Positions 17,034-29,685 of a stretch of DNA of 64,000 bases are shown piece after piece. The notes under the pieces are model-generated. The model worked only from the letters and a program-made list of their open reading frames with translations. It had not been told where the DNA came from and did no database searches. The stretch lies in the NCBI RefSeq assembly GCF_964204865.1, contig NC_135260.1, forward strand, positions 21,266,001 to 21,330,000. The letters run 5' to 3'. The position numbers and the translations under genes were made by a program. This DNA comes from Styela clava. Its lineage: Eukaryota. Each line of letters opens with the position of its first letter. Position 1 is the stretch's first letter.

Positions 17034-19758
17034 TGTCATGATAGATTGCTAATTTTCAATTCACACTTCAATTTATTTTTAGTATCGAATAAAACAATTG
17101 AAGAAGTTCAATACATAAATGACGTTAATAAACATAACGTGATGGGATTTTAAAGACCACTGTTTATTGTTCCAAAAAGTCTGTTCCCAAAGTCTAAGTG
17201 GAATAACGTAAAGATTTTAATTAAATTCACGTACTGATTTTTGTAATCATAATCTCATTCTGATATTGCACCGCATGCTTCCCATGGAAATACATTTATT
17301 GGATGTTGTACATCGTCATTAGTTGCTAGTTGTATTAAAGTTATATAAATTTAATTGGACCAGTAATTTATCATTTTTGGCTTCATACCGAATAATTATC
17401 TATACTAGTTAATTTTCAACTGTTAATAGATAAAAATAATATAATAAAGCTAAGTGTTTAGAATTCGGGAAGTTGTGCAATACTGCTTGTATTGTAACCC
17501 AGCAGTAGCATTTCCAATGCGGAGAGCCACGATCTTGAGTTAAGTATGGTAGTTTACACGCTATATTGTATACTAGTCTGATATTCATCTAAATATGAGC
17601 AATGCAATTACTCTCAATTGAGTCTTTTATTATAATTTCATTTTTTTAATCGAGTCGTAGCGATTACCATATTCGTACTGAGAAAATTTTTGTTTGCGAT
17701 GAATTTGACAGCGAATTCACATTGAATGCGTTTTAACTCTATTTCATAAGCGTTTGCTCTTTTGTCAGTACAGGGAGACCTCGGGTTATTTATTATAATT
17801 TCATTTTTTCAATCGAGTCGTAGCGATTACCATATTCGTACTGAGAAAATTTTTGTTGGCGATGAATTTTACAGCGAATTCACATTGAATGCGTTTAACT
17901 CTATTTCATAAGCGTTTGCTCTTTTGTCAGTACAGGGAGACCTCGGGTTATGACGGTCGCGACTTACGGAACGATGTTTCGAGGTTACAAACGCGCACTC
18001 CATAACGCTGTTTCGAGGTTACGAACGCAATTAACGAACATATACAGATATAAAAGATAATACTGTACTGTAATATCTAAGCCTATAAACTGGATCATTG
18101 TGATCAAGAAAATCAGTGCTCTGGGCTCATTGGTTTTCGTTATAGCTAATTTCTCCAAATTCATGAATTGGATCGATATAGGGCCCGTTGTAACCAAAAA
18201 TATAATTGAATCGATAAAATATGGTAATTAGTATTCCAAACCCGAATCGATAATCCTAATGGAATCGATATCACCATACGCACATACGTATAAGTATTTG
18301 GAGTCAAGTCGTCTGTATCAGTGTCGTTTCGCCATGTCTCTTCATCGTTTGTTCTCTGTGTATAACTACAATATTAAACTCATCCACAACGTTCAATGTG
18401 TTCTTTGTGTGCTAAACTATTACGATTATGAACGAATAATCACTAAGCTTCAGTCACATGGTACCAGGGCTGCCACTCTAGATATTTTATATCTAGATCT
18501 AGATATTTTTTTCAAGATCTAGATGTAAAATTTGGAGCCTAGATGTTAGCTATAAAATCTAGATATTCAAGGTTCGAAGTATTATTCAGTGGGAAATAAA
18601 TAAATAGATGTGTATAATACTGTGATAGGTGAATTTATATTATTTCATTATTTAGAAGAATTGATGTAAGATTGATAAAACTCAGTTATATTGTATTCGT
18701 CCACCGCTACCATATGTAATTAATATATTTAAATAACAAATTAAACATGTGACGTTTTAATTAACGTTAAATAGAAAGGACGACGTTGGTTCGATGAGTC
18801 AGCGCTTAGTATTGCATTGTTGCCAAGGCTGAAAGGGGTGAGAATAACTTGTGTTGTACACTCTAAAAAAACTTGAGTCAATCGCGTGACTAATTCGAAA
18901 GAGTTAGGAACAAAATGACTCAATCGTGACTCGAGCGTCATTTCTCTCGCACTCTCACTCGTTTTTGAGTCAAATATTCTCTCGTTTGACGACCGCCTTC
19001 TTTCTCTCGCCGCTAATTTCTTTGTATATTTTTTAAAGTTGGAACCGGCGAAGCGTAGAATTGGCGGGGAAATCGTCATTTCTCCTCTCGCGTTGTCGAC
19101 GGCGGTTGTTTCGGCCGGAGGTTATCATGCAGCATGGCCACTCGCAGCTTGCGTCGCCTATCAGTTACGGTTAAATATATTATGCTGGGATTTTTATTTT
19201 GCGTGAGAGGCCAATAGGACAGTTGGATGGGGTAGGCTAGGTCGTTGTTTTTTTACAAGTGGATTACAAAGTGAATTGCTGTTATGACAGATGGAATTTA
19301 GCTTTCACCTGCTACATTCTGACAGTGCTAACAGCTTTGGGGCGGTTGTCCGTTGTCGGTAAGTGATTGCTAGCAGTGGATTCAAATAAGATTATCGAAA
19401 TGAGCATGAACTGCAGTATAGCACAACTGGCTACTGAGCCAAGTTAGATCTGCCGGCCTAAGCTACCGGTAGGCCTATTGTCTGACTGTTAAGTTAACTT
19501 TATGTCTGAAGTAGGCTACATGCTGTTCAAGCTCAAGTTACAGGGTCTATAAGACAGTACAACTAGCCTATGTCAGTCTGCCATCTCTTTCTTTCTTAAA
19601 CAGTTACCGATAACTCATTGCAGTGTTAAATTGGTACAGGTACTTTTATCACACTGCTTGCACAGCTATAGGCCTGGTATATATACTTGTCTTGTTTTGT
19701 TCTTTTATTGCAGTTAAGCATAACTTAGATATAACAGTAATCAAAGTAGTTTCTTGCA

Positions 19759-22702
19759 ATGGAATTTTCTCAAAATTTTTCTGTGAATGAAGTGGTGTCA
19801 TTTCTCAAAGAGAAGATTTTAGTAACATCCGAAATTGAACACATGATTCAAAGTAAGTTGGTACTTTCAACTTCCACCATGCCAATAAAATATGTGCATA
19901 TTATCCAAGATATATATTTATATATATATAGGGAATTCACTTTTTTGATGATTTTCCAACCTATTTTCAGAGGAGCAAATTAATGGCCAAACTCTGCTGG
20001 ATTTGAATGATAGCGATTTAAGGACTCTTGGATTCTCAACAATTCGTGCCGTGAAGGAAATGCAACGACTCATAATGCAATGCAAAAACGAAGCAAATGG
20101 CCCAAGTGTCATGTTGTGCCTAGAGGAGCCACCTGTAAGTAAATGGTTTATTGTACTGGTGTATCTACTTTCCGTTAGGTATATCATATTCGTGTTCTTT
20201 ATCTACAGTTTGCCAATCTTCATGGAAAGATTCTCCAGTTTTCAGGGGGTTGTGATGTTATTGGACATTTGAATGAGAATGGGTATCTTAGACGAAGAGA
20301 TCAGAAAATATTTACGAACATTTGTGTGGAAATATTAGTTTCTGAAGCTGTTAAGAGAGGATACAAAAAAAAGTAATTCATGTTTGTCTCGTAAGCGGGA
20401 GATGTTGAGATTGAGTCCTATGCAGGTCATCCCGACTGAGTGTAAATAATTGAGTAAGCTTATCCCGACCAACCTCATTCTCACAATATATAGTGGCTAC
20501 TGGTATAGAGCCTGGTTTGAAGCGAAAAGCGAAGAAACATATCACCTTCATAAAAAAATTATGGTCAGTCCTTGATGTCCTATTATTGTGGCACCCTGCC
20601 TGCCATGGGAACTTACCGGTACTATTTTTGTAGTGTTATGCTCTGGGTCTAATTGATCCGGGCTTTTGACAATTGCAGTTTACTCGTTTGATATAATACA
20701 TTTTTTATTGTTTATTAGCTACCCGCCATCTGCATTGAAAGTTGATCTCGCAAAATCAATTGTCGAGGAATTTCCAAAGCTGAAGTTAAAGTTAGAGGGA
20801 ACAACCGGATATGTACGTATTATCCTTTTGAGATAATTTCGCTTTCCCTACAAGGCATTATTTAATCTCATGAATCTTGTACACAATATTTCGTCATTAA
20901 GGCTGTATTCCTCTCTTCTGAAGTTGCCAAAATGGGTGTTAAATATGATTCTGTGTTTACTGCGAGTCTGCTCTCTGTCAGCTTTGTCATTAGGGCTCTT
21001 TTGTTGTTATTGTTAAATTGCTAAAAATGTTTTTAGGGCCATTATTATGATCCTCTTCGTGGTTCCGGCTTTATAGAAAACAAGCTCAAAACTTTACGAA
21101 AACAAATGGCAATAGAAGATAAGATGTATAAAAAACAAAAGAGAAGCCACTCAACATATGCAAGTAGTTCCAGTTTTGAGAGTAGCGAAGATGCTGACAC
21201 CAGTGGGAGTACTGTTGAACTGGATGCCTCACTTCTGGAAGACGATAGCCCTATACTGAAAAAGGTGGGAAATTTCTTATTTTTTTATAGGTGGTAATTT
21301 TTATTTCTCCGCAGCTAGTATTTTATTGGAATATTTTATATGCATATTGCTTTTCAGATTAAATGGCTGAAAGAAACCACACCTAACAAGGACAATAAGG
21401 CAGAAATATATAACATAATGAAGGAAAGTCATGACTATCGTAGGCTTGAAATACAGCTGAAGCCTATGACCTTAACTGACATTTTAGAAAAGTACCCAAG
21501 GTTCTGTGATGCTTATGAGGGTGGATTGGTAAGTTAGCAATAAATCTAGATGTAAAGTGCAATGTACATAGGCTGTTTATTATTGTATTCGGTGCTCCTG
21601 AAGTATGCGAACCAAGATGGCGGACATCGAAACGTAGCATGGGTAACAGGTTAGGGTTGGGCCATAATTTTATTCCAATTTTCGTTAACTTAGTCCTATT
21701 ATGAGTTCTTCCAAGTCCTTCCGTAGTATTTGTACCTAAAATTATGGCCTAACTCTAACCTAGTACACATATTACATTCCGATGTCCGCCATCTTGGTTC
21801 GCATTCTTCAGGAGCCCCTTGTATTCATCACATCAAGATATTTTTAAGAAGTACGGATATAGAAAGCATCTTTTTTTTTACATGTGCTTCTTGTGGACTC
21901 AGATTGACTGTGAATTTGAGATGAATTACCCGGAGTGTAAGAAGTTTATGGAAATTTTTCCACCACTCATTCAAAAAATTCTTAAAATGGATCAGGATTG
22001 TGTTCAGTGTGATGATGGTATGTGCTTTATGCTTTATATTACTGATATTTTATGTATAAATACTGGTTGACTTAGAACTATCTCTGCCACATTTCCAACT
22101 GGGCGGCAGTGAAATAGCTTTATTATATCTATGTTTTTTGTGTGAGAGCATATTTAGAGTACTTGACACATTTTAGATGGACTAAAGAGTCTTCTAGTTC
22201 TATCGAAGATTTTGCCACCTCTCAACACAAAGGGGAGGAAAGGACAAGAGCAGTGGGCATTATTTAAGTTTCAAGGGGTGCGTACTCTGTTTCCTAACTT
22301 GTTTGCAAAATACCATAGCAGATGCAACGTGACATGTTTCTGAATGAATTTTCAAAGTGATGACATCGTTTGGAAACTTATTCATTCTTTTTTATTCAGG
22401 CCGGCTGCAACGTTGGATATTATGCTGAAACCAGGCCTCCATCATTGAGACAGCCATTTTTATTGGTCATTGGTCCGAAATCTCATCCTGAGGAATTCTT
22501 CTTAATTCTTGACAAGAAAGTGGTGCCAGTTGGAAATTCATCATTGCTGGCTTTTTATAGACTGTTCGCTTCGTTTTGGATTTTTGGAATTGAGTACTAT
22601 GAAAAACTGGCAACTTTCTTCAATTTTTTTGAAGCTATTCTTTTCGGCATGGATCCCAAACCTTCAGTGGCCTCATTGTTGGCTGCATTGGACTTTGTGT
22701 AA
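19759..22702 (+). CDS. Intact 9-exon gene, 477 aa: N-terminal SAM domain and SAMD3-like / transposon-accessory C-terminus
   Basis: Exons 19759-19852, 19971-20134, 20209-20372, 20719-20812, 21037-21264, 21358-21528, 21903-22017, 22177-22277, 22400-22702, all GT-AG, total 1434 nt with no internal stop. SAM-like FSVNEVVSFLKE...EQINGQTLLDLNDSDLRTLGFSTIRAVKEMQRLI; motifs YPPSALKVDLAKSIVEEFPKL, ILEKYPRF, QPFLLVIG, AFYRLFASFWIFGIEY. Confidence 0.85.
21591..21818. mobile_element. Merlin-like MITE in intron 6 of the SAM gene
   Basis: Long TIR GGTGCTCCTGAAGTATGCGAACCAAGATGGCGGACATC / reverse complement ending GGAGCCCC; perfect 8-bp TSD TTGTATTC; related half copy at about 36441-36520. Confidence 0.8.
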
Positions 22703-24480
22703 AAAAAAAAAAAATGATCCTACATAGACGGCTCAAAATGAAAATGTGCTGATGCCACCCTTTGTAATTTTTGTGTGTCCACTTTGTTTATTTTGTTTTT
22801 ATACTGATTTGGCCCTATGTTAAACCATCATGTCAGAGTACGACTTGTTAGTTTATACACTTTATAAAAAATCGATATGTATACACGAATTATGCATTGT
22901 CTCTTTTTAGCGTTCAAAAATGCAGATTTTATAGCCCGATGTTCATCTCAAAATGAGATTTTTTTTCGGAACTTTCTAAAGCGATTGTCTCATATCGCCA
23001 AAATTTGACATAGGCCACTGCAGTTTTGAGTCGTCGATGTGAGCAAACACTGGGGTCATAATTTTCATTATGATTTCTTTCTGTGAAATTTATTTCATTT
23101 TCTTTTGTTCATTGGTGATTGTGGATTAGTCTGCATCTTCGGTGATTGTTTATTGTGTTGCTGTTTATACCCTTATATAGCAACACAATTAGCGATCACC
23201 GAAAATGCAGATGCGCTCACGCTTGAGTGTTTTTGAAGTTCTTTTCCAAGAAAAATTTGGTATATTTAATTTCTGCTTTTTTGGTAAATGCATGGGTAAC
23301 TTAAGAAAGTTGAAATGGGGCTGTGGGAATTGGAGAGGAAACCAATAACTCACTTTTTGGTGACTCTATCGAGTTGTAAACTTGACTCAAAAAAGAGCCA
23401 TCGCAAATGATCTTGACGACTCTATCAAGGGATAAATTTGACTCAAAAAAGAGTCATCACATGACTCTTGACGACTCTATTGAAGCGGAAATTTGACTCG
23501 AAAAAGAGTCATTGTGCGTGACTCTTTTGACGACTCAATCAAGGGATAAATTTGACTCAAAGAAGAGTCATGTGCGTGACTCAAGTAAAGAGTCAAATAT
23601 TTCTTGACTCTTTGAAAGAGTAGGAGGCTCGTTGAGTCAAATTTAAGTCAATATTTTTTAGAGTGTAAAGTCATTTAAATCCATAAGTGATATTGAATTT
23701 GTCTCTTCAAACATCAACCTATCGAAATGCCAAAGTGTATGCACTACCAGCAAAAATTTAGAAAAGATCGTCTTAAGGAATCAGCCTTTAAGGCAGGGGT
23801 TCCCAAACTTATTTGGCCGCGGGCCAAAATTTCAAGGCGAGGATACTCGCGGGCCAGTAAAGCAGAATGACCAAAGAAGCGCGACGTAAAGGCTGGGGTT
23901 CAGGGCGCGCTTAAGCGGCCTGAGAAAATTTTGAAAAATAGGCACCAAAATAGGCTGCAAGATTGATTTTAGATACACCCAGTATCGCATGAAATAAACT
24001 TCATAAGTATAATAGTTTGGTGATAGAATACGCGAGGAATAACAAGCACGACTTTCAAAAAGGATTTGTAACTGATAGCGACTAATGAAGTTACTTGCTC
24101 ATCTGGAGTACGGCTTCGTATAAATGTCTACTCATATCAGGGTTGTCCAAAACGAATCGAATATTCGAATGTATTCGAATATCAAAGTATTCGAATACCT
24201 TTTCGGCTGATTTTCGAATAACTACGAATAGTAGCCACTTTTCGTCGTAAACGTGGTGTTTCGTTTTACTGGAATCTTCAAACGACTTTTTACGCTGTCT
24301 CACGTATTGTAATGACGATGAATTAGAATTGGCACTTTGATTGTTTATATTCTGTGTGACCGTACGTCGCATAGTGTTGCGACACATTTGCAGGTTTGCG
24401 TGGGTGGACATTGCCGACATTCGTCTACGAGGCTTCTAATTTACAAATTCATTTCCATTACGTCGAAAAATTGACAATTA

Positions 24481-24945
24481 CCGTATTTCCCGGCTAATAA
24501 GTCGCTTTTCTAGGCCACCAAGATAAAGTGATTTGTGACCCTTTCGTTTTGCCGATTCAGCAGAACACGACAAGAAAACACAGCTGTGAAATAACCCGTG
24601 GACGTACAGTGTATTACTTCCAAAATCTTCACAGTGTATTACTTCACATTCCAAAATTATTTCAACATTCGGGTTAAAAGGTTGTCCAAAATGATTGCCG
24701 CTTTACTAATTAAATTTACCGCTCAATTGTTAAAAATAGTTAATTCTGTGAGTATGATTCTACCAAACTAACATGATCTGGTTCTAAACATTTAAAATTA
24801 TTAGCGCATATCAGCATAACTGAACAACAGGGACACAATTTTTCTACCCGTCTTATTGAAGGCCAAATGGAAAAACCCCTTTTTGGAGTGCTAAAAATAG
24901 ACATCGTCCTATTTGCCATGTGGACTTATTAGCCGGAAAATACGG
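24481..24945. mobile_element. pogo/Tc2-like MITE (duplicate copy 1)
   Basis: TIR CCGTATTTCCCGGCTAATAAGTC / GACTTATTAGCCGGAAAATACGG, TA TSD. Confidence 0.85.
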
Positions 24946-27461
24946 TATTTATAGCAGTCATTGTTACGATATCCAATAAATTGTCACAAGTTGGAAAAAC
25001 AAGTCGGTTTATTAGAAAATAATTTCTGATAACGATAGTTAAAAGTATCGATCCTTTACCAGGATGATTTTTTGTTGCGCAAAATAATCCAATCCATGAC
25101 TGGTACCAGCATTTAAAATGTCATGCCGTATTAATTTAATTCTGTTCAATGTAACTCGTGGTTGTATCGACAATCTGTGGACATAAAATGTGTGGTAAAC
25201 TGACCGATTTTATTAAAAATTGAATTCATATTTTATATTGATAAAATAATGGAAGTATTAATACCAAATACCACGGGCATTTGTGGACATGAAATACGTG
25301 GTAAATTGCCCAATTATAATTTCGGATTCGTATTTACAACATAATTAAACTATTATAATTCTAAAATGCAACGGCGATCTGTGATCTTAAAATGTGTGAG
25401 AAACTGCCCGATCCCATGGAAATACATTTATTGGATGTTGTACATCGTCATTAGTTGCTAGTTGTATTAAAGTTATATAAATTTAATTGGACCAGTAATT
25501 TATCATTTTTGGCTTCATACCGAATAATTATCTATACTAGTTAATTTTCAACTGTTAATAGATAAAAATAATATAATAAAGCTAAGTGTTTAGAATTCGG
25601 GAAGTTGTGCAATACTGCTTGTATTGTAACCCAGCAGTAGCATTTCCAATGCGGAGAGCCACGATCTTGAGTTAAGTATGGTAGTTTACACGCTATATTG
25701 TATACTAGTCTGATATTCATCTAAATATGAGCAATGCAATTACTCTCAATTGAGTCTTTTATTATAATTTCATTTTTTTAATCGAGTCGTAGCGATTACC
25801 ATATTCGTACTGAGAAAATTTTTGTTTGCGATGAATTTGACAGCGAATTCACATTGAATGCGTTTTAACTCTATTTCATAAGCGTTTGCTCTTTTGTCAG
25901 TACAGGGAGACCTCGGGTTATTTATTATAATTTCATTTTTTTAATCGAGTCGTAGCGATTACCATATTCGTACTGAGAAAATTTTTGTTGGCGATGAATT
26001 TTACAGCGAATTCACATTGAATGCGTTTAACTCTATTTCATAAGCGTTTGCTCTTTTGTCAGTACAGGGAGACCTCGGGTTATGACGGTCGCGACTTACG
26101 GAACGATGTTTCGAGGTTACAAACGCGCACTCCATAACGCTGTTTCGAGGTTACGAACGCAATTAACGAACATATACAGATATAAAAGATAATACTGTAC
26201 TGTAATATCTAAGCCTATAAACTGGATCATTGTGATCAAGAAAATCAGTGCTCTGGGCTCATTGGTTTTCGTTATAGCTAATTTCTCCAAATTCATGAAT
26301 TGGATCGATATAGGGCCCGTTGTAACCAAAAATATAATTGAATCGATAAAATATGGTAATTAGTATTCCAAACCCGAATCGATAATCCTAATGGAATCGA
26401 TATCACCATACGCACATACGTATAAGTATTTGGAGTCAAGTCGTCTGTATCAGTGTCGTTTCGCCATGTCTCTTCATCGTTTGTTCTCTGTGTATAACTA
26501 CAATATATTTACTCATCCACAACGTTCAATGTGTTCTTTGTGTGCTAAACTATTACGATTATGAACGAATAATCACTAAGCTTCAGTCACATGGTACCAG
26601 GGCTGCCACTCTAGATATTTTATATCTAGATCTAGATATTTTTTTCAAGATCTAGATGTAAAATTTGGAGCCTAGATGTTAGCTATAAAATCTAGATATT
26701 CAAGGTTCGAAGTATTATTCAGTGGGAAATAAATAAATAGATGTGTATAATACTGTGATAGGTGAATTTATATTATTTCATTATTTAGAAGAATTGATGT
26801 AAGATTGATAAAACTCAGTTATATTGTATTCGTCCACCGCTACCATATGTAATTAATATATTTAAATAACAAATTAAACATGTGACGTTTTAATTAACGT
26901 TAAATAGAAAGGACGACGTTGGTTCGATGAGTCAGCGCTTAGTATTGCATTGTTGCCAAGGCTGAAAGGGGTGAGAATAACTTGTGTTGTAAAGTCATTT
27001 AAATCCATAAGTGATATTGAATTTGTCTCTTCAAACATCAACCTATCGAAATGCCAAAGTGTATGCACTACCAGCAAAAATTTAGAAAAGATCGTCTTAA
27101 GGAATCAGCCTTTAAGGCAGGGGTTCCCAAACTTATTTGGCCGCGGGCCAAAATTTCAAGGCGAGGATAATCGCGGGCCAGTAAAGCAGAATGACCAAAG
27201 AAGCGCGACGTAAAGGCTGGGGTTCAGGGCGCGCTTAAGCGGCCTGAGAAAATTTTGAAAAATAGGCACCAAAATAGGCTGCAAGATTGATTTTAGATAC
27301 ACCCAGTATCGCATGAAATAAACTTCATAAGTATAATAGTTTGGTGATAGAATACGCGAGGAATAACAAGCACGACTTTCAAAAAGGATTTGTAACTGAT
27401 AGCGACTAATGAAGTTACTTGCTCATCTGGAGTACGGCTTCGTATAAATGTCTACTCATAT

Positions 27462-29685
27462 CAGGGTTGTCCAAAACGAATCGAATATTCGAATATCAAA
27501 GTATTCGAATACCTTTTCGGCTGATTTTCGAATAACTACGAATAGTAGCCACTTTTCGTCGTAAACGTGGTGTTTCGTTTTACTGGAATCTTCAAACGAC
27601 TTTTTACGCTGTCTCACGTATTGTAATGACGATGAATTAGAATTGGCACTTTGATTGTTTATATTCTGTGTGACCGTACGTCGCATAGTGTTGCGACACA
27701 TTTGCAGGTTTGCGTGGGTGGACATTGCCGACATTCGTCTACGAGGCTTCTAATTTACAAATTCATTTCCATTACGTCGAAAAATTGACAATTACCGTAT
27801 TTCCCGGCTAATAAGTCGCTTTTCTAGGCCACCAAGATAAAGTGATTTGTGACCCTTTCGTTTTGCCGATTCAGCAGAACACGACAAGAAAACACAGCTG
27901 TGAAATAACCCGTGGACGTACAGTGTATTACTTCCAAAATCTTCACAGTGTATTACTTCACATTCCAAAATTATTTCAACATTCGGGTTAAAAGGTTGTC
28001 CAAAATGATTGCCGCTTTACTAATTAAATTTACCGCTCAATTGTTAAAAATAGTTAATTCTGTGAGTATGATTCTACCAAACTAACATGATCTGGTTCTA
28101 AACATTTAAAATTATTAGCGCATATCAGCATAACTGAACAACAGGGACACAATTTTTCTACCCGTCTTATTGAAGGCCAAATGGAAAAACCCCTTTTTGG
28201 AGTGCTAAAAATAGACATCGTCCTATTTGCCATGTGGACTTATTAGCCGGAAAATACGGTATTTATAGCAGTCATTGTTACGATATCCAATAAATTGTCA
28301 CAAGTTGGAAAAACAAGTCGGTTTATTAGAAAATAATTTCTGATAACGATAGTTAAAAGTATCGATCCTTTACCAGGATGATTTTTTGTTGCGCAAAATA
28401 ATCCAATCCATGACTGGTACCAGCATTTAAAATGTCATGCCGTATTAATTTAATTCTGTTCAATGTAACTCGTGGTTGTATCGACAATCTGTGGACATAA
28501 AATGTGTGGTAAACTGACCGATTTTATTAAAAATTGAATTCATATTTTATATTGATAAAATAATGGAAGTATTAATACCAAATACCACGGGCATTTGTGG
28601 ACATGAAATACGTGGTAAATTGCCCAATTATAATTTCGGATTCGTATTTACAACATAATTAAACTATTATAATTCTAAAATGCAACGGCGATCTGTGATC
28701 TTAAAATGTGTGAGAAACTGCCCGATTTACCAACATTTGAGTTATGATAATAGAATTAAATTAACACGGTAAGGCATTTTAAATAGTGGTATCGGTCATG
28801 GATTCGAATATTTTGCGCAGCACAAAATCATCCTAGTAAAAAGTCCATACTTTTAAATACAAACCAATGGCAACCATCATCCAAATTAGTTCCCAAGAGC
28901 GGGATAAAATATAAATTCTTTTTCTGACGTGTGACAATTATTCGTGAGTACGAAAATAAGAATAAAAAACTAATTATATTCGGCACAATATCACCGCAAT
29001 CTGTGGACATAAATTGTGTGGCAAACTCGCGATTAATATTAATTTTTGATTCCTATTTCCGTATTCACAAAATACAACGGCGATCTGTGGACTTGGAATG
29101 TGTGGTAAACTACCCGATTATAAATAATTTTTGATTCCTATTTTCATATTTATAAAATAATAAAAGTATTATTACTCAAACATACAACGGCGATCTTCGG
29201 ACCTCAAATGTGTGGTAAAGTTCCCGAATATAAATAATTTTTGATTCATATTTTTGTACTCGCGAAAAAATTGTCACAAGTCGGAAAAATAACTCATACT
29301 TTATCCCGCTTTTTGGCAAATAATTTGGATAATGGTTGATATTTGAAAGTATGGGCGTTTTACTAGGATGATTTTGTGTTGCGCAAATATTCAAATCCAT
29401 CATCGATACCACTATTGCCGTATTATTTTAATTCTGGTGACATGACTCATGGTATATAAAATATATACTGCAATAATCTGCAAATATGAAATGCCTGGTA
29501 ATATAGCTAGGTTGTAACCTGTAGATAGCAGTTATTCCATTGCTTATTGTATGGAAATTCCTACATACATTTAGATAAGCTTCAATTAACGGATTTTATT
29601 TTCGAAGTATTCGAAATTTCATATTCGGAAAAAATAATTTCGAATGTATTCGAAATAGTGAACTATTCGGTTTTGGCCATCCCTG
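27462..29685. mobile_element. Non-autonomous hAT-like element with TTCGAAT subterminal repeats (left end also at 24138)
   Basis: CAGGGTTGTCCAAAAC / GTTTTGGCCATCCCTG inverted ends; TSD not cleanly recoverable. Confidence 0.65.
27795..28259. mobile_element. pogo/Tc2-like MITE (duplicate copy 2), innermost element of the nest
   Basis: Same TIR and TA TSD as 24481-24945. Confidence 0.85.

What the first reader, a model, noticed from the sequence alone, without database searches (positions are those of the whole stretch)
18859..23665. Recently mobile CACTA-like element with no transposase, carrying an intact spliced SAM-domain gene
Seen in the sequence: 12-bp CACTCTAAAAAA TIRs; a TA target duplication shown by an exact empty site in the adjacent duplicate (about 26990); subterminal palindromic repeats; and nine GT-AG exons that splice to a stop-free 477-aa protein, with candidate 5' UTR splice sites (donor about 19359, acceptor about 19713). 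The six-frame track shows this gene only as fragments, and there is no room for a transposase. Established: CACTA/EnSpm systems use a transposase (TnpD) plus an accessory protein (TnpA) that binds subterminal repeats, and SAM domains oligomerise. Inference: this could be half of a bipartite transposon system, an accessory-only element that supplies a SAM-polymerising end-binding or regulatory factor and borrows transposase in trans. It may also be a living relative of the source of SAMD3-like host genes. The ORF stayed intact even though an intron acquired a MITE, which suggests selection on the protein.
Basis: partly seen in the sequence, partly recalled or inferred. Interest (0 to 1): 0.85.

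Follow-up and report, generated by a model that had tools for sequence, protein, structure and literature searches.

The report
Transposase-deleted CACTA-like transposon keeping partner gene
This is a recently inserted copy of a two-gene CACTA-like DNA transposon of the sea squirt Styela clava that has lost its transposase gene by an internal deletion but keeps an intact, expressed partner gene, and that partner gene family sits beside related transposases in many animals.

Summary
Window 18859-23665 is a 4807-bp element with CACTCTAAAAAA inverted ends, a 2-bp TA duplication, an exact empty site at 26990 and clustered GAGTCA end repeats. It carries a nine-exon GT-AG gene of 477 codons. Seven of its eight splice junctions are seen in RNA-like runs from three studies.

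This is not a dedicated half of a bipartite system. It is one of about eight copies, all different deletion derivatives of a roughly 7.1-kb two-gene ancestor.
- The copy on C3 has, at the point where the window copy is deleted, a 697-aa C2H2 plus CMC/CACTA-type transposase ORF.
- The copy on C1 shows that ORF ending 18 bp before exon 1.

The partner gene is the element's own second gene, not captured cargo. Its family lies on the same strand next to related transposases in 21 of 80 loci from other organisms, and inside three other TIR/TA-bounded families in this genome.

Copies differ neutrally (dN/dS about 1), so the intact ORF reflects youth, not selection. The SAM assignment is probable. 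The SAMD3 link is only a language-model lead.

The scan noted related elements elsewhere in this genome before (s1-817584, s1-829524).

The parts
18857..18858 (.). left copy of the 2-bp target duplication (TA)
   Evidence: a single TA at the empty site 26990-26991
18859..18870 (+). 5' terminal inverted repeat CACTCTAAAAAA
   Evidence: the same 23-nt end pattern occurs 15 times in the genome against 0 for the control pattern
18875..18972 (.). 5' subterminal region with four GAGTCA/TGACTC motifs
18859..19686 (+). 5' leader shared by all copies. It includes a conserved candidate splice donor G|GTAAGT at 19359/19360, whose use is not shown.
   Evidence: alignment of seven copies; no joint seen at this donor
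19686..19687 (.). deletion junction. About 2.5 kb holding the transposase ORF is missing here, from 13 nt before that ORF's acceptor AG to about 15 nt after its stop.
   Evidence: compare L008:1335-3459 and L009:5116-6484
19759..19852 (+). exon 1 (ATG at 19759; first half of the SAM-like domain)
   Evidence: joint 19852>19971 in X1, X5 and X6
19971..20134 (+). exon 2 (second half of the SAM-like domain)
   Evidence: It aligns weakly to the BICC1 SAM domain, E 0.086. It is the only copy of this exon in the genome.
20209..20372 (+). exon 3
   Evidence: the only copy in the genome
20719..20812 (+). exon 4
21037..21264 (+). exon 5
21358..21528 (+). exon 6
21591..21818 (.). high-copy MITE in intron 6 with 82-nt inverted arms and an 8-bp duplication TTGTATTC. 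It is shared with the C3 copy and absent from the older subfamily.
21903..22017 (+). exon 7
22177..22277 (+). exon 8
   Evidence: the Gnomon model P0121 on a sister copy uses the same joints
22400..22702 (+). exon 9 with the stop codon. This is the most conserved C-terminal domain (three strands followed by helices).
22703..23653 (+). 3' UTR. A spliced RNA-like contig runs from exon 8 to 23667.
   Evidence: X1 record 6
23357..23640 (.). 3' subterminal repeats: four direct repeats of about 56 bp, 14 GAGTCA/TGACTC motifs and four GACTC-N6/7-GAGTC palindromes
23654..23665 (-). 3' terminal inverted repeat
23666..23667 (.). right copy of the target duplication (TA)
26990..26991 (.). exact empty site (single TA) in the neighbouring duplicate
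   Evidence: the DNA run has a contig that joins 18854 to 23664
25412..28725 (.). second copy of a 3.3-kb tandem duplicate whose first copy (17280-18858 plus 23666-25411) holds the element
   Evidence: 99.4-99.7% identity, 4 mismatches and 2 indels

Best explanation
What it is. The element is a non-autonomous internal-deletion derivative of a two-gene DNA transposon of Styela clava. The transposon is about 7.1 kb and belongs to the CMC group (CACTA/EnSpm-Mirage-Chapaev).

Ancestral layout, shown by combining sibling copies:
- a CAC... inverted end and GAGTCA subterminal repeats;
- a roughly 0.8-kb leader;
- a single-exon ORF of about 830 aa for a C2H2-finger DDE transposase;
- 18 bp after its stop, the acceptor of a nine-exon gene for a 477-aa protein (SAM-like N-terminus, helical middle domain, conserved C-terminal domain);
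- a roughly 1-kb 3' UTR, further GAGTCA repeats and the other inverted end.

History of this copy. A deletion with short similarity at its ends removed exactly the transposase ORF. The partner gene, its acceptor and both ends remain. The copy then inserted (or the deleted form transposed) at a TA, after or alongside a very young 3.3-kb duplication. It makes correctly spliced mRNA.

Inferred, not shown:
- It can move only with transposase supplied in trans by a sibling.
- The partner protein plays the part that TnpA plays in maize En/Spm. It would bind the family-specific subterminal repeats and bring the ends together through its oligomerising N-terminal domain, while the C2H2 transposase cuts at the CAC ends.
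- The two genes share the leader through alternative splicing.
For: Element and insertion.

Spliced and expressed gene.

Copies and their different deletions.
- C3 copy (L008:1368-3458): a 697-aa ORF exactly where the window copy is deleted.
- C1 copy (L009): transposase residues 360-829, then a stop 18 bp before the point equal to window 19687, then exon 1.
- The older subfamily keeps only the first ~78 codons of the transposase, joined into mid exon 4.

CMC affinity of the transposase:
- Homologs of 800-850 aa occur across Metazoa.
- 15 of 31 aligned members hit PF02992 (best E 7e-7) and 4 hit DUF4218.
- C405, C408, H615, H619 and E639 are invariant. This fits the C(2)C plus H(3-4)H plus E signature, the CA..TG termini and the 2-5 bp duplications given for this clade in PMC12730594. 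Animal CACTA elements have 2-bp duplications in PMC1636069.

The partner gene is native to these transposons:
- An HMM of its family hits the same strand beside transposase homologs in 21 of 80 metagenome-derived loci (17 downstream, 4 upstream, none on the opposite strand). That includes 14 of the 31 loci with at least 2.5 kb downstream.
- L066 has CACTGTAAAAC ends and a TA duplication around both genes.
- Three other Styela families have both genes inside CACT... ends with TA duplications, and transposase ORFs of 797-840 aa.
- Each family has its own enriched subterminal 6-mer.
Against: - No copy with both genes intact exists in this assembly for this family. The C3 transposase lacks about 130 C-terminal residues, so no source of active transposase is identified.
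- The shared-leader splicing was not seen. RNA-like contigs read through the donor at 19359 and stop at 19687-19718, where the assembly graph branches.
- The runs are only guessed to be RNA, although spliced joints are absent from the DNA run.
- Nothing shows that the partner protein binds DNA. The fold searches gave only weak rows: BEN domains at Z 4.8-5.2 for the middle domain, and lambda-integrase arm-type and AP2-like rows at Z 2.8-3.8 for the last domain. Pfam finds no BEN domain.
- The SAM call for the Styela protein itself is weak when tested exon by exon.
- The empty site may be the other haplotype placed in tandem by the assembler rather than a true paralogue.
Confidence: 0.8

Rival explanations
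1. One reading: an evolved accessory-only element, one stable half of a bipartite system whose other half carries only the transposase.
For: - In this assembly the only complete partner gene (this copy) and the only near-complete transposase (the C3 copy) are on different elements.
- In a sister family with CACTGTTAAAAAAA ends, about 30 loci keep the partner gene's last exon. Only one 9462-bp copy and one fragment have transposase. Paired ends give sizes of 5.5-6.3 kb.
- Transposase-less, partner-bearing derivatives are therefore common.
Against: - The window form is a single copy.
- The eight copies carry four different deletions, with junctions typical of random internal deletions.
- The C3 copy also keeps exons 4-9, so it is not a clean 'other half'.
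- dN/dS among copies is about 1.
- Relatives in other organisms and three other Styela families carry both genes in one element.
- The sister-family copies could not be fetched to see whether their partner genes are intact.
Confidence: 0.1
2. A non-autonomous element that captured a host SAM-domain gene (as Pack-type elements do), so the gene is cargo with no role in transposition.
For: - Exons 2 and 3 are unique in the genome to this copy.
- The older subfamily lacks exons 1-3.
Against: - The C1 copy has exon 1 directly after the transposase stop.
- The C3 copy keeps the last 254 nt of intron 3.
- The same gene family is linked on the same strand to related transposases in many other loci and families.
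- No close host orthologue is seen. The next best match to exon 9 outside Styela is 46% identical.
Confidence: 0.03
3. A Tc1/mariner-type element, because of the TA duplication.
For: TA duplications are seen in six of seven scorable copies.
Against: - One copy has TG/TG.
- The ends are CAC...GTG with long subterminal repeat arrays.
- The family's transposase has the CMC motifs and PF02992 affinity, with no Tc1/mariner domain.
Confidence: 0.01

Closest known systems
Maize En/Spm (the type CACTA element) with TnpD transposase and TnpA accessory protein
   Same: - CAC...GTG ends and arrays of short subterminal repeats.
- Two element-encoded proteins in one orientation, with the transposase coding region lying upstream of the multi-exon accessory gene behind a common leader. 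The En/Spm layout is as summarised in PMC1636069.
- Transposase family affinity to PF02992.
   Different: - A 2-bp rather than a 3-bp duplication.
- The transposase carries N-terminal C2H2 fingers.
- The partner protein has no detectable similarity to TnpA. It is built from a SAM-like domain plus two domains without a Pfam family.
- Alternative splicing from a shared leader is not shown here.
Animal 'TRC' CACTA elements (SmTRC1 of Schistosoma mansoni, PMC1636069; Spongebob, PMC4298943)
   Same: - Animal hosts and 2-bp duplications.
- A Transposase_21-type transposase.
- Shorter transcripts encoding a second protein that lacks the transposase domain.
   Different: - Those elements end in CCC, these in CACT.
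- The SmTRC1 paper reported no similarity between its second proteins and anything in other animal or fungal elements. Here the second gene belongs to a family conserved from cnidarians and echinoderms to fish, and linked to the transposase in many loci.
[quoted passage not shown]
   Same: CA..TG termini, 2-5 bp duplications, and C(2)C and H(3-4)H motifs before the last catalytic E.
   Different: Placement within the clade (EnSpm, Mirage or another branch) was not resolved. There is only a weak DUF1258 row, E 0.018.
PIF/Harbinger two-ORF transposons (transposase plus Myb-like DNA-binding partner)
   Same: Works like it in principle: a second element-encoded protein is needed or used alongside the transposase, and deletion derivatives depend on trans supply. 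This comparison rests on general knowledge and is an analogy only.
   Different: A different transposase superfamily, 3-bp duplications, and an unrelated partner protein.
Vertebrate SAMD3 / SAMD3-like proteins
   Same: - The nearest ESM Atlas clusters to the sea-cucumber family member P0247 are named SAMD3 or SAMD3-like (score 0.95).
- Without the SAM part, a SAMD3-like cluster still ranks 7th at 0.86.
- Size is similar (about 500 aa) and the SAM domain is N-terminal in both.
   Different: No alignment-based support was obtained. No SAMD3-named protein appeared in the phmmer or word-based searches. Homology and direction of descent are open.

Membership tests
CMC / CACTA-like DNA transposons | Termini 5'-CA(C)...(G)TG-3' as inverted repeats | tested here: met
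   CACTCTAAAAAA, 12/12 inverted. The same ends occur in all copies.
CMC / CACTA-like DNA transposons | Short target duplication: 2-5 bp for the clade, 2 bp for animal TRC elements, 3 bp for canonical plant CACTA | tested here: met
   2 bp (TA in six copies, TG in one) with an exact empty site. This fits the clade and animal TRC elements (PMC12730594, PMC1636069). It does not fit the canonical 3 bp of plant CACTA.
CMC / CACTA-like DNA transposons | [quoted passage not shown] | tested here: met
   Met in the sibling copy L008:1368-3458, not in the window copy, which has no transposase. C405, C408, H615, H619 and E639 are invariant in 31 homologs.
CMC / CACTA-like DNA transposons | Match to Pfam Transposase_21 (PF02992) | tested here: inconclusive
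   The Styela ORF itself has no PF02992 row, and a six-frame genome search found none. However, 15 of 31 aligned homologs match, best E 7e-7.
En/Spm-type organisation | Arrays of subterminal repeats at both ends | tested here: met
   18 GAGTCA/TGACTC motifs are confined to the terminal 110 and 305 bp. Sister families have other family-specific motifs.
En/Spm-type organisation | Two proteins made from one transcription unit by alternative splicing of a common leader | tested here: inconclusive
   The donor at 19359 is conserved in all copies, and two similar acceptors precede the two ORFs. No such joint was seen in contigs.
TnpA (Pfam Transposase_24) accessory proteins | Sequence similarity to TnpA | tested here: not met
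   No such Pfam row for the exons or for 60 family members.
SAM domain proteins | Significant match to SAM_1 or SAM_2 | tested here: inconclusive
   - The window exons give no Pfam SAM row, no BLASTP match to P0247 and no profile match to the family alignment A3.
- Exon 2 aligns with the BICC1 SAM domain at E 0.086.
- Eight family members have SAM_1 hits, best E 6e-7.
- The model of P0169 matches the BICC1 SAM domain.
- The domain is split by intron 1, and the joined protein was not searched.
SAMD3 family | Alignment-based homology over the non-SAM part | tested here: inconclusive
   Only language-model feature similarity. No SAMD3-named protein was found by sequence searches.
BEN domain proteins | Pfam BEN match or a strong structural match | tested here: not met
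   Three BEN chains are among the top five VIA rows, but at Z 4.8-5.2, within the noise range stated by the tool. There is no Pfam BEN row.
Tc1/mariner | TA duplication together with a DD(34-37)E/D transposase | tested here: not met
   One copy has TG/TG. The family's transposase is of CMC type.

The most novel reading that the evidence does not exclude
The SAM-like (in fish, apparently CIDE-N/PB1-like) plus conserved C-terminal-domain protein is the ancient, metazoan-wide accessory protein of one clade of CACTA-like transposons. It would be a functional counterpart of plant TnpA: it reads family-specific subterminal repeats and pairs the ends through a polymerising N-terminal domain. Partner-only derivatives such as this one would be a recurrent, successful parasitic form. 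Vertebrate SAMD3 would be a domesticated descendant of this gene.
Probability: 0.25. Interest if true: 0.75.

Novelty: new variant of a known kind. Interest (0 to 1): 0.55.

Why it matters
Two-protein transposition is well studied in plant CACTA elements. For animal relatives, the one detailed study found no conserved second protein (PMC1636069).

This work shows three things:
- A single gene family is linked, on the same strand, to one clade of animal CMC transposases across many hosts.
- The gene is correctly spliced and expressed from a young copy in Styela.
- Transposase-less copies that keep it are common in this genome.

That gives a concrete candidate for the animal accessory factor, with a defined candidate binding motif (GAGTCA repeats) and a testable pair of genes. 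If the SAMD3 lead holds, it would also give an origin and a hint of function for a vertebrate gene of unknown role.

The window element itself is an ordinary deletion derivative.

Tried and rejected
- Pfam on each exon: nothing useful.
- PF02992 and PF15992 (DUF4769) six-frame searches of the genome: no hit, and the controls did not ring either, so these are uninformative.
- Search for a partner with the same 23-nt ends: only the eight family copies plus one odd site.
- Tc1/mariner reading: rejected.
- Selection among copies: dN/dS about 0.75-2 on 10-24 changes, so no signal. Values for the C13 and C6 copies are invalid because those copies have a deletion across exons 8-9.
- SAMD3 by sequence: two word-based searches returned only 6-7 close relatives. 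Cluster names of 20 phmmer hits were all 'uncharacterized', with one 'PB1 domain-containing'.
- Papers: no paper in the library links SAMD3 or SAM domains with CACTA/EnSpm.
- Fold searches: Foldseek on the full homolog model found only the SAM part. VIA-align gave no row at or above Z 5.3 for the whole model, or Z 4.2 for the last domain.
Whether those partner-only copies are intact is unknown.
- Joined protein: the 477-aa protein was never sent to a search, family, fold or structure tool. It was assembled only inside local scripts, to check frame and stops and once as a local tblastn query against fetched loci, which gave no hit. All external searches were exon by exon by reference.
Full report
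**Source.** The window is C14:21266001-21330000 of a 377-Mb assembly. A protein 94% identical to exon 9 is annotated in Styela clava on a contig whose length equals C8 of this assembly. The organism is therefore taken to be the ascidian Styela clava.

**Observation: ends and insertion site.**
- The element spans 18859-23665. It has 12/12 inverted ends (CACTCTAAAAAA), each flanked by TA.
- Both 30-nt flanks recur 8.1 kb downstream, abutting on a single TA at 26990-26991. This is an exact empty site without a footprint.
- It lies in the second copy of a 3.3-kb tandem duplicate that is 99.4-99.7% identical to the first. I cannot tell a true young duplication from two haplotypes placed in tandem. 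Either way the insertion is younger than about 0.1-0.6% divergence.
- A DNA run holds a contig with the empty junction.
- GAGTCA/TGACTC occurs 18 times in the element. All occurrences are in the first 110 bp or the last 305 bp, against 0.37 per kb elsewhere in the window. There are four GACTC-N6/7-GAGTC palindromes and four direct repeats of about 56 bp at the 3' end.

**Observation: the gene.**
- My first model had a misread coordinate for exon 9. The Gnomon protein of a sister copy corrected it.
- The nine exons are 19759-19852, 19971-20134, 20209-20372, 20719-20812, 21037-21264, 21358-21528, 21903-22017, 22177-22277 and 22400-22702. All have GT-AG borders and give 477 codons with one terminal stop.
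- Contigs of three RNA-like runs from three studies carry seven of the eight joints at exactly these positions. The DNA run carries none. Intron 2 is implied by a contig that has exon 3 with 30 further letters on each side.
- One spliced contig continues from exon 8 through the 3' UTR to 23667.
- The proposed 5' UTR intron (19359 to 19713) was not seen. Contigs read through the donor and reach 19687-19691 upstream of exon 1. The assembly graph must branch there because the leader is repeated in the genome, so contigs cannot settle the point.

**Copies.** The 5' end, the 3' end and exon 9 each recur at seven to eight places.
- Oriented comparison shows two subfamilies and four different internal deletions.
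- C3 copy (L008, 7.48 kb, TG/TG duplication). It is 98.7-99.3% identical to the window copy over the shared parts. Where the window has 19687-20464 it has 2.1 kb holding an open 697-aa ORF (L008:1368-3458). It lacks exons 1-3 but keeps the last 254 nt of intron 3.
- C1 copy (L009). It lacks the 5' end. It holds transposase residues 360-829 with one frameshift. The stop lies 18 bp before the point equal to window 19687, then comes exon 1, then a deletion to exon 8.
- Five older copies (87-97% identical). They are on C13 and C6, plus three on C8 that share flanks and so are one insertion later duplicated. They keep about 78 N-terminal transposase codons joined out of frame into mid exon 4.
- Exons 2 and 3 occur nowhere else in the assembly.
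- The simplest history is an ancestor of about 7.1 kb: leader, transposase ORF, nine-exon gene. The window copy is the derivative in which a deletion between two similar pyrimidine-rich acceptor regions removed the transposase ORF and little else.

**The transposase.**
- The ORF has hundreds of homologs of 800-850 aa in fish, insects, echinoderms, Hydra and host-associated metagenomes. The C3 ORF therefore lacks about 130 C-terminal residues.
- On its own it gives only weak Pfam rows. Of 31 aligned members, 15 hit Transposase_21 (PF02992), 4 hit DUF4218 and 2 hit Plavaka.
- The alignment has invariant C405/C408, H615/H619 and E639, after conserved acidic positions.
- This is the signature quoted for the EnSpm-Mirage-Chapaev-Transib clade, whose members have CA..TG ends and 2-5 bp duplications (PMC12730594). 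Animal CACTA elements with 2-bp duplications were described earlier (PMC1636069, PMC4298943).
- The TA duplication therefore does not point to Tc1/mariner.

**The partner gene is native to these transposons.**
- phmmer with exon 9 finds 219 representatives. Among them are proteins of 450-550 aa from sea stars, sea cucumbers, sea urchins, a priapulid, soft corals and many teleosts.
- The window exons align colinearly with these proteins.
- Several members have Pfam SAM domains. The fish members instead carry an N-terminus that looks like CIDE-N/PB1.
- I built an HMM from eight full-length members and searched six-frame translations of 80 metagenome-derived loci that had been found with the transposase alignment.
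- 21 loci have family hits, all on the transposase strand. In 17 the hit is downstream and in 4 upstream. Of the 31 loci with at least 2.5 kb downstream, 14 have a hit.
- In L066 both genes lie between CACTGTAAAAC ends with a TA duplication.
- Three more distant Styela families have both genes between CACT... ends with TA duplications, and uninterrupted transposase ORFs of 797-840 aa:
  - C3:19914096-19923557, 9462 bp;
  - C8:8722414-8729701, 7288 bp;
  - C13:17627148-17634219, 7072 bp.
- Each family has its own enriched subterminal hexamer: GAGTCA here, and TAGTAA, CGGTAA and AGTAAA in the others. That pattern is expected if a family-specific protein reads these repeats. It also argues, by inference, against cross-mobilisation by the other families despite nearly identical terminal 12-mers.

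**Selection.** Among Styela copies, exons 5-9 show dN/dS of about 0.75-2 on few changes, and divergence equal to that of the introns. The window and C3 copies differ by one codon in 304. The ORF is intact because the copy is young. Long-term constraint is shown only by conservation of the family across phyla.

**Partner-only derivatives are common.**
- A profile of the last domain hits at least 52 places in the genome, while the transposase profile hits about a dozen distinct places.
- About 30 of the former belong to the family of the 9462-bp element. Paired exact ends give sizes of 5.5-6.3 kb with no transposase match.
- This agrees with two earlier first-reader notes of this scan (s1-817584, whose length of 9462 I matched, and s1-829524).
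- I could not fetch these loci. Whether they share one deletion or keep intact genes is open.

**What the partner protein may do.**
- A model of the sea-star homolog P0169 is confident (pLDDT 86.9).
- Its N-terminus matches the polymer-forming BICC1 SAM domain.
- Residues 56-172, which correspond to exons 3-5, give BEN-domain chains, two of them DNA complexes, among the top five rows, but only at Z 4.8-5.2.
- The last domain was modelled from window exon 9 (pLDDT 89). It is three strands followed by helices, and its best rows have Z up to 4.1. They include lambda-integrase arm-binding and AP2 domains at Z 2.8-3.8.
- All of these are within the noise range stated by the tool, and Pfam finds no BEN domain.
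- The TnpA-like role is therefore an inference from position, linkage and the repeat architecture, not a result.

**SAMD3.** The ESM Atlas places P0247 nearest to clusters named SAMD3 or SAMD3-like (0.95). Without the SAM part a SAMD3-like cluster still ranks 7th at 0.86, next to clusters with CIDE-N or DUF4769. No sequence search returned a SAMD3-named protein. This is a lead only.

**Limits.**
- The runs are contigs and their RNA status is a guess. They cannot show transcript ends.
- The joined 477-aa protein was not submitted to any search, family or structure tool. It was used only in local scripts.

**Verdict.** The element is a young, expressed, transposase-deleted derivative of a two-gene CACTA-like transposon. 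The notable result is at family level: a conserved partner gene of an animal CMC clade.

Noticed in passing
window 21591-21818: MITE with 82-nt inverted arms and an 8-bp duplication TTGTATTC (hAT-like length). Its word depth in all four runs is hundreds to thousands of times that of the flanks, so it is a very high-copy family that is also present in RNA-like contigs.
   Followed up: partly
window 17280-28725: A 3.3-kb tandem duplicate at 99.4-99.7% identity, one copy filled and one empty. It could be a real young duplication or two haplotypes assembled in tandem.
   Followed up: partly
window 25159-25455, 28473-28769 and 28997-29271: Short arrays of a repeat unit of about 100 bp (60-81% alike) at the end of each duplicate copy and just beyond.
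   Followed up: no
L008:5767-7082 (C3 copy): A 1.3-kb insertion in the 3' UTR of the C3 copy, with inverted GGACACGTAG / CTACGTGTCC near its ends. It is probably another small transposon.
   Followed up: no
G000 C19:5.43-6.09 Mb: About eight evenly spaced (~100 kb) copies of a truncated transposase relative (358-364-aa frame, one TGA each), each with a partner-domain hit about 750 bp away on the same strand. This looks like a large segmental array containing a decayed two-gene element.
   Followed up: no
L029, L044, L076, L099 (metagenome loci): In four loci the partner gene lies upstream of the transposase on the same strand, ending a few hundred bp before it. Gene order is therefore not fixed across the clade, unless these are tandem elements.
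   Followed up: no
window 20121: All four runs, DNA included, read C where the assembly has T. This changes a Leu codon to Pro in the linker after the SAM-like domain. It is either a strain difference or an assembly error.
   Followed up: no
teleost family members P0207, P0230, P0234, P0254, P0224: Fish members of the partner-protein family carry a CIDE-N/PB1-like N-terminus in place of SAM. Both are domains known for head-to-tail oligomerisation, which suggests the N-terminal module is interchangeable.
   Followed up: partly
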